A stretch of DNA of 64,000 nt from Camelus ferus (lineage: Eukaryota): contig NC_045726.1 of NCBI RefSeq assembly GCF_009834535.1, forward strand, positions 14,136,001 to 14,200,000, in the 5' to 3' direction. Below, piece by piece: positions 12,978 to 45,055 of this stretch (positions within the stretch are counted from its first letter, which is position 1; each line of letters opens with the position of its first letter). The position numbers were made by a program, and so were the translations under genes. Below the pieces are notes generated by a model. The model was not told where the DNA came from and made no database searches. It saw nothing but the letters and a program-made list of their open reading frames with translations.

Positions 12978-15900
12978 GTGAGTATGGCCGCTCTCATACC
13001 CCTCTATCCCGGAGGGCCAGACTGTCCCTGGAGTGGAAGCTGGGAATGTCTGGTGGGAAAGTGGGCTTTCTGATCTCCGACACACCTTTCCCCTCCCCCA
13101 ACACTCACCGCAAGGATTAACGGACCTGCGGTCCTGCGCAGGGTACCGGGCACCGCGTGCTTTCCCCCTACCCTCAAGCCTACTTGGCTGATGGCGACCC
13201 CTTGCAGTCACACACATTGCAGACAGGTGTGTTGGCCAGAGGACCACAGGCTGGCCAGCAGCCCCTTGGCAAATACAAGCTGTTGTGACACATTGTGGGT
13301 GGAGAATCCAGGTGCCTGCTTCTCAGCTGAGCAGTCAGTCACGTGACCCACCACCCCGGCCTCAGCCTCCCCACTCTGTCCTACTCGTCACCTTTCAGTA
13401 CTCCAGCACCTGGCTTGAATATCCCTGTCTGCAGCCTGGCAGTGCCGGGCCTGGTGGCCCTGAGCCTGACTGCACACCCATGGGAGGAAACAGCCTGGTG
13501 CTCACGGCTCAGAAGCCTGCCTCCTACCCAGCTGGTGGAGTGGCTATGGGTGCTCTCGCTGCATCATGCACCCATGGGCCACTGGCGCAGGCCTGGACAG
13601 GCTTGGGATGTTTGTAAACAGCAGGGTGGGGAGGCAGCCTCCAGGGCACTGACTCAGGCACAGGTTGTGCAAGCCAAGCGGGAGGAACAGGGCAGGCACT
13701 GCCACCTTGAACCCAGGTGGGTGGTGGCCACCTGGCAGGGGCGCGGGGAGTGGTGCCCCTCACACTCCCCCTCTGCTTTGGGGGCTGCTCTTCAGGCTGG
13801 TGTTTGGGATGCTGTACCCAGCTTATGCTTCCTACAAGGCTGTGAAGACCAAGAACATTCGTGAATATGTGAGTGTTGGGGTGGGCAGGAGGCCTCCGCT
13901 CAGGTGGGGGGACAGCAGCCTTGGGGGGTGAGGTAGGATTTGGCCAGGTGGGGAGGATCTGAGCTGGCCTTCCCCTCCTCCAATGGTATGATCTAGTGGC
14001 GAATCCTGGAACAGAGTGGGTGTGGATGGAGGGTGGGCTGTTGGGGTGCCTTGCATGATCTTGTGGGTGAAGCCCGCTGGGGGTGGGTACGGGAATGAGT
14101 GGCAGCTGCTCTCTGAGGCCAGCCAGGTGCCAGGGGAATGCAGTGGGACTGGCTCTCTGGAATCTCTGGGCTGGGTCAGCCTGGAACAGAGGGGGTTGGC
14201 ACTGCAGGCTCAGCTGCTGGCCTCTGACCTCCCTGCGTCCTGATCCCCCAGGTCCGGTGGATGATGTACTGGATTGTCTTTGCACTCTTCATGGCAGTGG
14301 AGACCTTCACGGACATCTTTATTTCCTGGTACGGGGGCAGGGCTTCTCTGGGCTGCAGGGAGGTGCTGGCCCTCCCCCGCCCGGCTCCCTGGCAAACCTC
14401 ACCCCCTCTGTTCTGCCAGGTTCCCTTTCTACTACGAGATCAAGATGGCCTTCGTGCTGTGGCTGCTTTCGCCCTACACCAAGGGGGCCAGCCTGCTTTA
14501 CCGCAAGTTTGTCCACCCGTCCTTGTCTCGCCATGAGAAGGTACCCCGGCAGGTGGCAGAGCGGGAAGCATAGGGGTAGGTGGGAGGAAGCAGCCCTGGA
14601 CTCAGGGTTCAGGACACTGGGGACACCTGGGCTCTCATTCCAGTCCCACTGCTGTTTAGCGATGGGACCTTGACAGAGCCTAAGCCTCCTCCTCTTCTGG
14701 GACAATCAGATGAGGGACACATGTGAATGATGTTTTGATGGTGGGGGAAGGCTGGAGCATGGCTGTTCACTGAGGTGTGAGAGCCGGTGAGGGGGTGGGG
14801 AGCCCTGTGCTTGTGTGGTTGCCAGGAAACTGTGCAGTGTTGGGGACAGGAGGCGTGGCACCCAGTGGTTTCTCTGGGTCCTCAGGGGAGTGACTCGGGC
14901 TGTCCACCTGAGCTTTCCTCCCCCCGTGTCCACAGGAGATCGACACCTACATCGTGCAGGCCAAGGAGCGCAGCTACGAGACGGTGCTCAGCTTTGGGAA
15001 GCGGGGCCTCAACATTGCCGCTTCGGCCGCTGTGCAGGCTGCCACCAAGGTGCCCTGGGCCCAGCCCTCCAGCGGCCCTGCCCCCACCCCCTGGGCCTTT
15101 TGGGTCCAGCTCTCTGTCAGGGAGCCTAGAGATAGCAGCTGTCCATGCCGGGGAACAGGAGTGAGAGGTGACAGGTGGGGTGCTGGCAGGAGCACGGAGC
15201 TGGAAGTTCAGACTTCCCTGGCTCTGACACTGACCGTGAGCTGCTGCTCCTGCTCTCTGGGCCCTTGTTGGCATGGGGGGGCTAGAAGGTTGCTTTCAGT
15301 ACTGAGGCCTGTGCCCCAGGGACAGCCTGCAGGTCAGCCTCGATTCCCCGGGCCGCTGCCCTGGCTGAGGCCCCTCCCTCCAGGTGGTACAGCGGCTCCC
15401 CCTCCCTTGCAGAGTCAGGGTGCGCTGGCTGGAAGGCTGCGGAGCTTCTCCATGCAGGACCTGCGCTCCATCCCCGACGTCCCCGCCCCTACCTACCAGG
15501 ATCCCCTCTACCTGGAGGACCAGGTACCCCGTCGCAGGCCACCCATCGGTGAGTCGGCAGAGGGACCCAGAGCTCTCTGGAGAGGGGTGGCTTCCTTCCT
15601 GCAAACTGTGACTTCCTCCAGGGCTAGAGGAAAGGCTGGCTCAACCCCAGGCCTTCAGACTATGTCAATGTCCAGCTTTTCCTCCTGGCCTCCTCTCCTC
15701 CTACAGGGTACCGGGCAGGGGGCCTGCGGGACAGCGATACCGAGGATGAGTGTTGGTCAGATACAGAAGCAGTCCCCCAGCCGCCAGCCCGGCCCCGAGA
15801 GAAGCCTCTGAGCCGCAGCCAGAGCCTGCGTGCGTTCAAGAGGAAGCCGCTGGTGCGGGAGGTCAGTGGCGAGGAAGACACAGGGAGGTGGGCTGCCTCG

Positions 15901-20663: not shown

Positions 20664-20931
20664 NNNNNNNNNNNNNNNNNNNNNNNNNNNNNNNNNNNNN
20701 NNNNNNNNNNNNNNNNNNNNNNNNNNNNNNNNNNNNNNNNNNNNNNNNNNNNNNNNNNNNNNNNNNNNNNNNNNNNNNNNNNNNNNNNNNNNNNNNNNNN
20801 NNNNNNNNNNNNNNNNNNNNNNNNNNNNNNNNNNNNNNNNNNNNNNNNNNNNNNNNNNNNNNNNNNNNNNNNNNNNNNNNNNNNNNNNNNNNNNNNNNNN
20901 NNNNNNNNNNNNNNNNNNNNNNNNNNNNNNN
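20664..20931. other. Assembly gap (268 N) in GC-rich region upstream of HR
   Basis: Run of N. Confidence 1.
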
Positions 20932-22150
20932 ACCCGAGGGGCACTTGTGCTTGCCCAGGTAAGGGGCTCTGGGGACAGCGTGAGGGCAGCTGGTTCATGA
21001 GTGCTGCTGCGCGTGTTAGCGGGAACGTGTGTATCAGTGTGTGTGTGTCAGCGCTCTCGAGGGGTCGGTGCGGGGCCGGAGTGGGCCCACGCGAGCCTGG
21101 GGGTGCGGGTCAGCTCGCCTTTGTCCCCGGATCGGGCATTGTGGCCGCACGTTGTGTGGATTTCCCTCTGTGTTTGTGTCTTTGTGTATCTCCTCAGATC
21201 TGCTCTGTCCTCAGGCACAGAACAGCCAGCCACAAGGGCTCCGTGGGCCTGGGGCCCCGGCTGTAGAGCGTGATGGGGTGCTGGGTGAGGGTGGACAGGG
21301 ACTCCCCCACCCCACCTCCCACGACCCCCTGTGCATTTCAGGAGCCTGTCCTGAGGGTCCTGGTTAAGTCCAAAAACTGTGATCTGACAAAGCAGACTTG
21401 GCAAATGGGGTGGGGGGAGGTGTCTGTCCCATTCCCCTGGGACAGTCCCCGTTCCCCCTTTGGAGATGACAGTGACAGGCCCTTGAGGCCCTGGACAGCC
21501 CAGGCTCCCACCCTGTCCTGCCCAGCCTCTTCTAGGCCTCAAGCCACAGGAATCTCCCCCCGGACTCTGCCACAAGCTTGGTTGCCAGAGGACACAGATG
21601 GGGGACCACAGGCACACCCCAGCCCCCGTCCGCATCCCCGGAGCCAGCCTGGAGCTGGAGGCTGGGGCTTGGGGCTTCAGGACTGCAGTCCCTGTTAGAC
21701 CCTCCAGGATCATTTCCCCTGGGAAACTCAGGTCCAGGCCACCCCTCGGGGGAGCTGGGGGAGGAAGGGAGTGCTAATAACTCAATCGTGTAAACAACCC
21801 CTAGCAGCCTGCCCTGCCACAGAGCCAGCCTCTGGGGGAAGGCAAAGGGGCTGGGAGACTTGATGCCAACATGACCCCAGTCCTGCCAGTGCCAGACATT
21901 TCAGGCCTCCTCCCTCAGGACCCCTCCTCTTCTCAGCTGATGGAAGGATCCCTGCTTCCATTCAGTCTTTTGGGAGGAAGTTTCCCTCCTGGCCCTTCAC
22001 GGCTTCCCTCTCCAGGGATGGCGGTGTGACCTGGGACAAGGCTAGAGGCATCTGAGACCTCATCCTTCCATGGAATGGGGCTGGGTAGGGTGGCCCTGCC
22101 TCTGTCTCAGACTGGGTGAAGGCAGGCCAAGGATGGCTTCCACAGGGAGG

Positions 22151-22282
22151 NNNNNNNNNNNNNNNNNNNNNNNNNNNNNNNNNNNNNNNNNNNNNNNNNN
22201 NNNNNNNNNNNNNNNNNNNNNNNNNNNNNNNNNNNNNNNNNNNNNNNNNNNNNNNNNNNNNNNNNNNNNNNNNNNNNNNNNN
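22151..22282. other. Assembly gap (132 N)
   Basis: Run of N. Confidence 1.
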
Positions 22283-22833
22283 CACCCCCGCAGAGGAGCC
22301 AGGATGCTTCCTCGGGTGGAGGGTGCCCTGCTTTCCCATTTCCTCTCCTCCTCTCTACTCCCTCCCAGGAGCCACTCCCATGGGCTCCTCTCCAGTGCTG
22401 GGCCTGGAAACACCAGGAGCACAGGATGGGGTAGACCCCCAGAACACGGAGCTAGAGCAGGTGGTGGAGTACATCTGGTCGCACTTCCTTTTCGGACACT
22501 TGGTGAAACCGAGGCCCTCAGAGCAGGGACATTCTAGAGCCTACACCCTTCTAGAACTGCCAAGGCAGGACACTGCGCCCCAGGAAGGGGCTTAGGTCTG
22601 AAATAGTGAAGAGGAGCTTGACTAGATGAGGACCAGGCAGGGCAGACCTGGGCCAGCGGGATGTGCCCATGTGCCAGAGCTGAAGAGGACCAGGAGCTAG
22701 TGGTCCAGCAGGCACCGGGTGGCTGGCATGGGTCAGAGCACCCATCACTGACCCGTGAGAACCCGACTGCCCCTGCCAGCTCTGGCACTGCCCCCTCCCA
22801 GCCGCCCTGCCCTGGCACCCCAGGGGGCACCCC

Positions 22834-23230
22834 NNNNNNNNNNNNNNNNNNNNNNNNNNNNNNNNNNNNNNNNNNNNNNNNNNNNNNNNNNNNNNNNNNN
22901 NNNNNNNNNNNNNNNNNNNNNNNNNNNNNNNNNNNNNNNNNNNNNNNNNNNNNNNNNNNNNNNNNNNNNNNNNNNNNNNNNNNNNNNNNNNNNNNNNNNN
23001 NNNNNNNNNNNNNNNNNNNNNNNNNNNNNNNNNNNNNNNNNNNNNNNNNNNNNNNNNNNNNNNNNNNNNNNNNNNNNNNNNNNNNNNNNNNNNNNNNNNN
23101 NNNNNNNNNNNNNNNNNNNNNNNNNNNNNNNNNNNNNNNNNNNNNNNNNNNNNNNNNNNNNNNNNNNNNNNNNNNNNNNNNNNNNNNNNNNNNNNNNNNN
23201 NNNNNNNNNNNNNNNNNNNNNNNNNNNNNN
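22834..23230. other. Assembly gap (397 N) over the HR promoter / start of exon 1, including the uORF1 start
   Basis: Run of N; flanks match the recalled human HR 5' region. Confidence 0.95.
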
Positions 23231-23263
23231 GCTGCGCTCTCCGCCGGGCTCTCCCTCCATTAG
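23231..23263 (+). CDS. 3' part of HR uORF1 (U1HR): ...AALSAGLSLH*
   Basis: GCT GCG CTC TCC GCC GGG CTC TCC CTC CAT TAG; ATG presumed in the preceding gap. Confidence 0.7.
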   Translation, partial: AALSAGLSLH

Positions 23264-23441
23264 CCGCGCTGCGCCGTGCTGCGCCCTCGCTGGTGCCTCT
23301 CTCCCGGGTAGCGGGATCGGCCCCCCTTCCAGGCACGACCCCCTCCCCCGGCCCCTCGGCCTTTCCCCCCAACTCGGCCATCTCCGACCCGGGGCGCGCG
23401 TTCCCCCCGGCCCGGCTCCCCCTCTCCCTCCGGGGACACCC

Positions 23442-23605
23442 NNNNNNNNNNNNNNNNNNNNNNNNNNNNNNNNNNNNNNNNNNNNNNNNNNNNNNNNNNN
23501 NNNNNNNNNNNNNNNNNNNNNNNNNNNNNNNNNNNNNNNNNNNNNNNNNNNNNNNNNNNNNNNNNNNNNNNNNNNNNNNNNNNNNNNNNNNNNNNNNNNN
23601 NNNNN
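23442..23605. other. Assembly gap (164 N) at the expected position of the HRURF/U2HR uORF
   Basis: Run of N; the ORF itself is not visible; position inferred from flanks. Confidence 0.9.
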
Positions 23606-23704
23606 GCCCCCGCCGCCTCGGGGGAAAGAGAGCGCGAGCGCGCTGAGCAGGAGAGCGGGAGAACGAGTCCTCGCCCGCCGGCCGGGAGGCCCCGGAGCCG
23701 GCTC

Positions 23705-23770
23705 ATGGGGAGAGGGCGCCCGGCGTCGGCCACCACGACCGCCGCCGCCCGCGCCGCGCCCGGCCCGTGA
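23705..23770 (+). CDS. HR uORF3 (U3HR-like), 21 aa MGRGRPASATTTAAARAAPGP*
   Basis: ATG 23705, TGA 23768-23770, inside exon 1. Confidence 0.75.
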   Translation: MGRGRPASATTTAAARAAPGP

Positions 23771-24579
23771 AGCCCAGGTAAGTGCCGAGAGGGGCGCCAG
23801 GCGTGCGTATGCTGGGGACACCCGCGGCGGGGCATTTCTGAGCCAAGCCCGCGCCGCATGCAGGGAGCGAGTTCCCCTTGCTCCTCAGGGCAGGGCCACA
23901 GCTCTGAAAGTTAGGATGCCCGACGGGGCCGGACCGCGTCGGAGCTGCGGCCCCGAAAACCCCGAGCGCTCTCCGTCACAGCTCCCCGGGCCGCCTCGCC
24001 TCCTTCCTGGGGCTCCCCTCAGTGGGCCGAGGTGGCCGCGCCGGGAGTGCGCTGCGGCTCTGGTGCCACCTGTCATCCTGGTCCTCTGCACGCACGTTCA
24101 ATTTTCCCTCCTTTGCCTCCCTCTGGGGCCCAGCCCGCTTTCCCCGCCTCCTTCGCTCCGCACCAGCCGGGCGTACAGTTACCGACGTCCACCGGCGGCC
24201 CCGGCACTGTGGCATCTTGACCCATCCCGGCTGAGGCCTCTTAACCCTGCTCTCCTGTGGTGGCTCACTCCTTCCCTTGGGGGCAGCGGTGGAGATCCCG
24301 GCCCTCAGCAGTTGTCCTTCGTTCTGCCTCAGAAGCCAAGGAACCGAAGAGCTCAGGGAAGAGGCAGACTCCTGGCTGCCCAGGAGTAGGGAGCGATTCC
24401 TGCCGGCAGCCCTGCCTTGCCGCCCTTCCCAATGACTCCAGCTTGCTCTCCGTTCGCTTTCCACCCAAACAAGCCTGGCTGGGGCTGAGGGGTCGGGGGT
24501 GGGCCGGCAGTCTCCCCTAGAGCCACAGGACTGACTGCAGTGTGGGAACAGGCCTCTGAAACTGCCCATTTCCCAGCCC

Positions 24580-24864: not shown

Positions 24865-25108
24865 CATTCTGGGGAAGGGGTGACCGACCCACACTGGAGC
24901 ATCCCACCCATGCGGGTCCTTGGAGTCACATGTAGGCAGGCAGCATGGAGCCCAGTTGTAGGTTGGCACTTGCCTTACTGGTTTGAGGCGCCTTTGTGCT
25001 GCCAGGGCGGTGCCCACTCTGTGCCGGGTGGTAGGGTGCTTCGGGCATGTGCCTAAGAAGCCCATGCTCTGGTGGTTATGCTCCAGGGACCCACTCTGGG
25101 AGAGCCCC

Positions 25109-25125
25109 ATGAGGGCAGGAGAGTG

Positions 25126-25126
<1 letters not shown>
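25109..25126 (+). CDS. HR uORF4 (U4HR-like), MRAGE*, stop overlaps main ATG (TGATG)
   Basis: ATG AGG GCA GGA GAG TGA with the final A at 25126 being the A of the HR ATG. Confidence 0.75.
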
Positions 25127-37658
<12,532 letters not shown>

Positions 37659-43200: not shown

Positions 43201-45055
43201 CAGAGGACCTGCCGGCAATAGCCACCGCTTCTTGGTGTGTGGCTCTTCCCAGTTTTGCAAAGCACTCTCACACTTATATCTGAGCCTTGTGCGGTCCAGC
43301 CTGGAGATTGTCCCCATGTACAAAGGAGGAGGCCCAGGAGCCTGTTTGTCTCATTCCACTAGGCCTCGGTTCCTTGAGGGGAGGGCTGTCTTACTCCTTT
43401 TCCCCAGAATGTAGCACAGTGCCTGCCACCCCTGAGTCCCATGGGCAGTCACTGCGCAGCCTTTGCTTATACTCAGAACTTCTGACTCTCTGTGTGATGC
43501 TGCCCTTTTTCGTGCTGATCCCTGTACAAGTTGCTATAAAAACAGCTGGGGGTGTGGGCAGGGCCATAGGTGAGAGTTGTATGAGCTGAGGGTTGGGCAT
43601 GTGTCTCAAAGCCTAGACCCCAATGTGAGGACCAGCCACAAGCTGTCAGTAAACCATAAGGAGAGGTGAGAAATACACAGTGACTTACATACACATGAGT
43701 CAGTGCAGGACACATGGCGACCCTCTCTGTGGAGCCTGATCCCTGAAGCAGCTCCCAGGAATCTTAGCCTCTTTCTGAAATGGAAGCTCGAATGCAAAGA
43801 GAGATGAGTTGCTGAGACAGCTGCAGTGCCCAGATACACAAGGGCCAGCCCCCTGGAGAGCTCAAAAATTTAAGGGTGTCTACCAGGAAGTGGATATTGA
43901 GGGACTGTATCTGAGATCTGATCTGGACCGAGGGCCAGTGAAGGCTGCTGTCTGTGCTGATCCTGTGGTGGGTGAGGATCTTCTTTCTCCCCACAGGATG
44001 AGGTGCTGCTGGTCCAGGAGGCTAAGAAAGAGTGCCGTGGGTCGTGGTACCTACCTGCAGGGAGGATGGAGCCTGGGGAGACTATCGTGGAGGCGCTGCA
44101 GCGGGAGGTGAAGGAGGAGGCTGGGCTGCACTGTGAGCCTCTGACGTTGCTGTCTGTGGAGGAGCGGGGCCCCTCCTGGATCCGCTTTGTGTTCCTTGCC
44201 CGTCCCACAGGTACGGCCCATCGGGTGGCATTGTGGGTAGAAGGCCATTGACATTTCCCCAGCTTATCCTTAGGTGAGATGAGCCCCTGATCTGGCTGGC
44301 ACAAGCCTGGCATCCTGAGATTCCAGCCTGAGGGCTTGACTTGGGGCCTCCCCACTTGGGGTCAGAGCTAGATGCCTGGGTGGCCCTTTACTCTGCCAGG
44401 CCCAGCACTTTCTTCAACATAGACCCTTTCCTCCACCCTGTTCCCCACACCTCCCCCAGGTGGAATTCTTAAGACTACCAAGGAGGCAGATGCGGAGTCC
44501 CTGCAGGCTGGCTGGTACCCACGAACCTCGCTGCCCACCCCGCTGAGAGCCCATGACATTCTGCACCTGGTAGAGTTAGCCGCCCAGTACTGCCAGCAAG
44601 CCAGGCACCCTCTCATTCTGCCCCAAGAGCTTCCCTGCAGTCTGATCTGCCAGCGGCTCGTGGCCACGTTTACCAGTGTCCAGACGGTGTGGGTGTTGGT
44701 GGGCACAGGGGGGACGCCTCACTTGCCCATCACTGCTTGTGGCTTCACTCCCATGGAGCAGAGGGGTGGCATCAAGATGGCCGTCCTGCGGCTGCTGCAG
44801 GAGTGTCTGACCCTGCACCACCTGGCAGTGGAGACCAAGGGGTTGCTTGGACTGCAGCACATGGGCAAAGACCAAACAGATGGCATCTGCCTGAATGTGC
44901 TGGTGACCGTGGCTTTTCGGAATCCAGGTATCCAAAATGAGCCCCCGAAGGTTCGGGGTGAGAACTACTTTTGGTGGAAGGTGATGGAGGAAGACCTACA
45001 AAGCCAGCTTTTACACAGGCTTCAGGAATCATCGGTCATCCCAATCAACAGATAG
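42974..45055 (+). CDS. NUDT18: NUDT18 (MTH3), 8-oxo-(d)GDP phosphatase, Nudix hydrolase 18, 323 aa
   Basis: join(42974..43135,43997..44210,44460..45055)=972 nt. Nudix box [23 protein letters not shown] at 44060-44128. Confidence 0.98.
43997..44210 (+). CDS. NUDT18: NUDT18 exon 2 (Nudix box)
   Basis: [28 protein letters not shown]...FLARPT. Confidence 0.97.
44460..45055 (+). CDS. NUDT18: NUDT18 exon 3, coding part
   Basis: [20 protein letters not shown]...SSVIPINR*. Confidence 0.97.

What the first reader, a model, noticed from the sequence alone, without database searches (positions are those of the whole stretch)
23442..23605. HRURF/U2HR micropeptide gene is predicted to lie entirely within a 164-N gap
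Seen: left flank ...CTCTCCCTCCGGGGACACCC and right flank GCCCCCGCCGCCTCGGGGGAAAGAGAGCGCGAGCG... Knowledge: in human these flanks bracket U2HR, the 34-aa inhibitory uORF ([34 protein letters not shown]) whose loss causes Marie Unna hypotrichosis by raising HR translation. The recalled human interval (~57 nt + 105-nt ORF + 3 nt) matches the gap size. Inference: the most phenotype-relevant hair-regulatory element of the locus is invisible in this assembly and would be missed in annotation and variant calling for a fibre-producing species.
Basis: partly seen in the sequence, partly recalled or inferred. Interest (0 to 1): 0.75.

Follow-up and report, generated by a model that had tools for sequence, protein, structure and literature searches.

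The report
Known hairless-gene uORF hidden in gap
The 164 unread letters lie in the first, untranslated exon of the hairless (HR) gene, just where the known inhibitory upstream reading frame U2HR/HRURF should be, so a well-known element is probably hidden by an ordinary assembly gap and nothing new is shown.

Summary
The locus is HR: the ORF from ATG 25126 matches residues 1-197 of platypus 'lysine-specific demethylase hairless' (E 3.5e-64). That protein aligns colinearly on the + strand to 37472, with a JmjC hit and REEP-like and NUDIX neighbours.

With donor CAG|GTAAGT (exon 1 ends 23777) and acceptor AG at 25085-25086, the first base after the gap is c.-211. The gap is nominally c.-375 to c.-212. 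Papers place the human U2HR ATG at c.-321, with 34 codons plus TAG, so c.-321 to c.-217. That maps to about 23496-23600, inside the gap and 5 nt from its right edge.

- The 211-nt island left of the gap has no ATG.
- Only two of the four uORFs reported for human and mouse are visible, both downstream of the gap.

The prediction is therefore well supported (about 0.85) but unprovable here. This is an assembly-quality remark about a known gene, so interest is low.

The parts
22834..23230 (.). 397-N gap upstream. With a human-like 690-nt leader the transcription start (c.-690, about 23127) and probably the first uORF would lie here.
   Evidence: leader lengths of 690 nt (human) and 695 nt (mouse) from PMC5903819. 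The position is an inference.
23231..23441 (+). 211-nt visible island, taken as part of the HR exon 1 leader. It is C-rich on the + strand (109 C, 54 G; seven C-runs of 4 or more) and has no ATG.
   Evidence: Its order and orientation between two gaps are not verifiable.
23442..23605 (.). 164-N gap, nominally c.-375..-212 of HR. Predicted site of the U2HR/HRURF uORF (about 23496-23600 if spacing is as in human).
   Evidence: papers.
23606..23777 (+). Visible 3' part of HR exon 1 (172 nt of leader), ending at donor CAG|GTAAGT.
23705..23770 (+). Visible uORF: ATG at c.-112, 21 codons, TGA. Candidate third uORF.
25087..25125 (+). 39 nt of leader at the start of exon 2 (acceptor AG at 25085-25086).
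25109..25126 (+). Visible uORF: ATG at c.-17, 5 codons, with its TGA overlapping the main ATG by one base. Candidate fourth uORF.
25126..37472 (+). HR (lysine-specific demethylase hairless) coding exons, from the start codon to near the C-terminus.
   Evidence: Platypus hairless P0018 aligns colinearly, residues 1-1166 of 1181. It was identified and named. JmjC hit at 36757-37056.

Best explanation
The window carries the HR (hairless) gene on the + strand. Its first exon is a GC-rich, CpG-island 5' leader that the assembly failed to read in two places. The 164-N gap most likely hides the conserved 34-codon upstream ORF U2HR/HRURF. In human, mouse and rabbit this uORF holds down translation of HR from the same mRNA. 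Loss of its start codon, missense changes or stop-loss raise HR protein and cause sparse, wiry hair. SHOWN here: the gene's identity, the exon-intron layout of the leader, the gap's position in c.-coordinates, and the absence of the uORF from all visible sequence. INFERRED: that the unread letters hold an intact uORF and that it acts as in the studied species.
For: 1. Identity. The ORF from ATG 25126 aligns from residue 1 to residues 1-197 of a 1181-aa protein (E 3.5e-64) named 'lysine-specific demethylase hairless'. That protein aligns colinearly from 25126 to 37472. There is a JmjC hit. A TB2/DP1/HVA22 (REEP-type) exon lies upstream and a NUDIX exon downstream on the same strand, matching the REEP4-HR-NUDT18 order I know from human.
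2. Position. The visible leader after the gap is 172 + 39 = 211 nt, so the gap is c.-375..-212. Human U2HR is c.-321..-217. Anchored on the right edge, this needs only that the true gap be at least about 110 nt.
3. The left island has no ATG.
5. Human and mouse leaders hold four uORFs. Only two are visible here, both downstream of the gap.
6. Only one of the three frames of the right flank is open to the donor, and the splice puts it in phase with the HR ATG. This fits the in-frame HRURF-HR fusion seen in human stop-loss variants.
7. The peptide is 100% identical between human and rabbit, so loss in another placental mammal is unlikely.
Against: - The letters are unread, so no ATG, frame, length or stop can be seen.
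- The gap length is an estimate.
- The 211-nt island sits between two gaps, so its order and orientation are unverified.
- The right-hand margin is only about 5 nt and assumes human-like spacing. Mouse figures (T403A in a 695-nt leader) give a spacing about 27 nt shorter. With that spacing the last codons would be visible in the right flank, and they are not.
- The open HR frame over 70 codons is weak evidence: 52% of shuffles are open too.
- The splice sites are read from consensus only, with no transcript data.
Confidence: 0.85

Rival explanations
1. The uORF exists in this animal but not under this gap. The small island is misplaced or misoriented, or the scaffold is otherwise wrong here, and the uORF lies in the 397-N gap or in sequence left out of the scaffold.
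For: The island is only 211 nt and is bounded by gaps on both sides. Four gaps cluster in 3 kb, so local assembly is poor.
Against: Counting back from the HR ATG uses only the right flank, which is continuous with the donor site. That count puts c.-321..-217 directly behind the right edge. The island is C-rich on the + strand, as expected for a leader reported to bind poly(rC)-binding protein 2.
Confidence: 0.07
2. This lineage has lost or strongly altered the uORF, so the gap hides only GC-rich leader.
For: Nothing positive. It simply cannot be excluded while the letters are N.
Against: The peptide is identical in human and rabbit and is functional in mouse. In the studied species, loss of the uORF gives a dominant hair defect.
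Confidence: 0.04
3. The gap is an artefact with little or no missing sequence, or a stretch masked on purpose. In the artefact case the flanks are nearly adjacent.
For: The gap length is only estimated.
Against: The flanks do not overlap and share no 10-mer. If they were adjacent, the leader would lack uORF2, and half of the four uORFs expected from the human and mouse figures.
Confidence: 0.04

Closest known systems
Human HRURF (formerly U2HR), the second uORF of the HR mRNA
   Same: Same gene (HR) and same exon (non-coding exon 1). The gap spans the human coordinates c.-321..-217. The downstream leader is open in the HR frame, as required for the human stop-loss fusion. Two further small uORFs follow, as in the four-uORF human leader.
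   Different: Here the element itself is unread. Its presence, sequence, start, stop and frame are all inferred.
Mouse Hr uORF2 (hairpoor allele, T403A in a 695-nt leader)
   Same: Inhibitory second uORF of the same gene. Its loss raises HR protein and gives a Marie Unna-like phenotype.
   Different: The mouse figures put the uORF about 27 nt closer to the main ATG. With that spacing its end would show in the right flank here, and it does not, so this species is closer to the human spacing.
Rabbit U2HR
   Same: A non-human mammal with a peptide 100% identical to human. Editing the three bases before its ATG raised HR protein about 1.4-fold and gave sparse hair.
   Different: The rabbit uORF has been sequenced and tested; this one has not been read.

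Membership tests
HR (lysine-specific demethylase hairless) gene | Protein homologous to hairless along its whole length, from residue 1 | tested here: met
   platypus hairless residues 1-1166 align colinearly at 25126-37472 on the + strand. The N-terminal exon gives E 3.5e-64.
HR (lysine-specific demethylase hairless) gene | C-terminal JmjC domain | tested here: met
   PF02373 hit, E 1.6e-05, 25.8 bits (cut-off 24), at 36757-37056.
HR (lysine-specific demethylase hairless) gene | Neighbours as in other mammals (REEP4 upstream, NUDT18 downstream, same strand) | tested here: met
   TB2/DP1/HVA22 exon at 14228-14533 (+) and NUDIX exon at 43976-44248 (+). The expected gene order comes from my own knowledge of human 8p21.3.
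HRURF/U2HR uORF | Lies in the 5' leader of the HR mRNA at about c.-321..-217 | tested here: met
   By position only: the gap is c.-375..-212, against human coordinates from the papers.
HRURF/U2HR uORF | ATG-initiated ORF of 34 codons ending in TAG | not testable with these tools
HRURF/U2HR uORF | Conserved peptide sequence | not testable with these tools
   Only the negative could be shown: the peptide is not encoded in any visible sequence.
HRURF/U2HR uORF | Same frame as HR, with no stop between the uORF stop and the HR ATG | tested here: inconclusive
   The 70 visible codons upstream of the ATG are open, and this is the only open frame of the three. However, 52% of shuffles are open as well.
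HRURF/U2HR uORF | Represses HR translation | not testable with these tools
   Needs reporter assays or ribosome profiling.

The most novel reading that the evidence does not exclude
The closed gap would show that this species lacks a canonical U2HR, or carries a changed start, stop or peptide. That would be a natural regulatory variant raising HR translation in an animal with an unusual coat.
Probability: 0.04. Interest if true: 0.55.

Novelty: already known. Interest (0 to 1): 0.1.

Why it matters
HR dosage controls hair cycling, and in human, mouse and rabbit the uORF is the part of the locus where single-base changes give a dominant hair phenotype. An assembly that leaves it unread cannot be used to annotate it or to call variants in it. 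The same probably holds for the transcription start and the first uORF, under the neighbouring 397-N gap. This is a practical caution for anyone studying coat traits with this assembly, not a biological discovery.

Tried and rejected
- Pfam on six large HR ORF pieces gave only the JmjC hit, so it could not name the gene by itself.
- The word-indexed protein search with the N-terminal exon returned only unnamed fragments and one 'hypothetical protein'. The exhaustive representative search plus a cluster look-up was needed to get the name.
- Wen et al. 2009, the original U2HR paper, is not held. The coordinates were taken from later papers that quote it.
- The open HR frame upstream of the ATG looked like support but is no better than chance by shuffling.
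- A literature search for U2HR/HRURF in sheep, goat or alpaca listed no paper holding either name among the 15 shown.
- The last three visible bases before the gap are CCC, the same as the three bases before the rabbit U2HR ATG. I rejected this as a sign that the flank abuts the ATG, because CCC fills 30 of 209 positions in the island.
- A word search of earlier scan notes found nothing on HR.

Full report
**Observation.** It is one of five N runs (268, 132, 397, 164 and 133 letters), and four of them lie between 20.6 and 23.6 kb. The flanks of this gap are 78-80% G+C with CpG o/e near 0.9. The gap therefore sits in a CpG island, the usual place for short-read drop-out. The uneven run lengths fit estimated gap sizes.

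**Continuity and frame, tested first.** The end of the left flank and the start of the right flank do not overlap. They share no 10-mer on either strand, so nothing points to a false gap between overlapping contigs. Beyond that, continuity cannot be shown. The left flank is only a 211-nt island (23231-23441) bounded by gaps on both sides, so its order and orientation rest on the scaffold alone. No protein-coding frame has to pass through the gap, because both flanks are 5' leader.

**Identity of the locus.**
- The ORF that starts at ATG 25126 aligns from its first residue to residues 1-197 of a 1181-aa protein (E 3.5e-64).
- Its sources name that protein 'lysine-specific demethylase hairless' of platypus, with echidna members in the same cluster.
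- That protein aligns colinearly on the + strand from 25126 to 37472, covering residues 1-1166.
- A JmjC domain hit lies at 36757-37056.
- A REEP-type (TB2/DP1/HVA22) exon lies upstream at 14228-14533 and a NUDIX exon downstream at 43976-44248, both on the + strand. This fits the REEP4-HR-NUDT18 order that I know from human 8p21.3.
I did not test that.

**Layout of the leader.** A consensus donor CAG|GTAAGT ends exon 1 at 23777. An acceptor AG at 25085-25086 opens exon 2, which has 39 nt before the ATG. The visible leader downstream of the gap is thus 172 + 39 = 211 nt. The first base after the gap is c.-211, and the gap is nominally c.-375 to c.-212. The splice sites are read from consensus only. 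One small check agrees with them: of the three frames of the right flank only one is open to the donor, and this splice puts that frame in phase with the HR ATG.

**What the literature says about the element.**
- In human, the MUHH mutation '-321A to G' destroys the start codon of an inhibitory 34-codon uORF of HR (PMC3738444). The same codon's T is quoted as 'T-320C' (PMC5903819).
- The stop is codon 35 and is TAG: c.104A>G gives Trp and c.105G>T gives Tyr. Stop-loss fuses HRURF in frame with HR (PMC12646977).
- The human uORF therefore occupies c.-321 to c.-217.
- The human and mouse leaders are 690 and 695 nt and hold four uORFs. In the mouse constructs, uORFs 2, 3 and 4 repressed HR expression (PMC5903819).
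- The peptide is 100% identical between human and rabbit. Weakening its start context in rabbits raised HR protein about 1.4-fold without changing mRNA, and gave sparse hair (PMC10570039).
- Missense changes also cause disease, so the peptide sequence itself matters (PMC7943595).

**Mapping onto the window.** Anchored on the right edge, c.-321 falls at 23496 and c.-217 at 23600. This is inside the gap, 5 nt from its right end and 54 nt from its nominal left end. The mapping does not depend on the stated gap length. It needs only that the true gap be at least about 110 nt.

**Absence from the visible sequence.**
- The left island has no ATG at all.
I used the peptide only as a probe of visible sequence.
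- None of the three frames at the start of the right flank shows a conserved tail followed by a stop.
- Two uORFs are visible, both downstream of the gap: ATG 23705 (c.-112, 21 codons, TGA) and ATG 25109 (c.-17, 5 codons, its TGA overlapping the main ATG). If the leader has four uORFs as in human and mouse, the first two are unread.
- With a human-like 690-nt leader, the transcription start would fall at about 23127, inside the 397-N gap.

**Weak points.**
- The open HR frame over the 70 visible codons fits the human fusion alleles, but 52% of shuffles are open too.
- The mouse figures (T403A in a 695-nt leader) place the uORF about 27 nt nearer the main ATG. With that spacing its last codons would be visible here, and they are not. 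This species must therefore have at least 211 nt of spacer, which is close to the human 216.
- The last visible bases before the gap are CCC, as before the rabbit ATG. CCC is too common in the island (30 of 209 positions) to say that the flank abuts the start codon.

**Mechanism.** As established in the studied species, scanning ribosomes translate the uORF, and this lowers initiation at the HR ATG on the same mRNA in a peptide-dependent way. The leader also has reported IRES activity, damped by PCBP2 binding. The + strand of the visible island is strongly C-rich (109 C against 54 G, seven C-runs), which fits such binding. For this window all of this is inference.

**Verdict.** The gap and its flanks are real, and the locus is HR. 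The prediction that U2HR/HRURF lies wholly under the gap is supported at about 0.85. The rivals are a misplaced island or scaffold error (0.07), loss of the uORF in this lineage (0.04), and an artefactual or deliberate gap with little missing sequence (0.04). This is a known element of a known gene hidden by an ordinary assembly gap, so it is of practical use only and of low interest.

Noticed in passing
window 22834-23230: The neighbouring 397-N gap probably hides the HR transcription start (about 23127 with a 690-nt leader) and the first uORF. About half of the leader is therefore unread, not only U2HR.
   Followed up: partly
window 23705-23770 and 25109-25126: Two small uORFs are visible in the HR leader. 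One has 21 codons, starting at c.-112. The other has 5 codons, starting at c.-17, and its TGA shares a base with the main ATG (TGATG). They are candidates for the third and fourth uORFs reported for human and mouse.
   Followed up: partly
window 23231-23441: The + strand of the island is strongly C-rich (109 C, 54 G; seven runs of four or more C). [quoted passage not shown]
   Followed up: no
window 20664-23605: Four of the window's five gaps cluster in the 3 kb upstream of and inside the HR CpG island. The HR promoter region as a whole is poorly assembled.
   Followed up: no
window 14228-14533 (+) and 43976-44248 (+): Exons with TB2/DP1/HVA22 (REEP-type) and NUDIX domains flank HR on the same strand, as expected for REEP4 and NUDT18.
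   Followed up: partly
window 22755-24389 (+): A 544-codon 'ORF' runs through both gaps and intron 1. It is an effect of high G+C and N runs, not a gene.
   Followed up: yes
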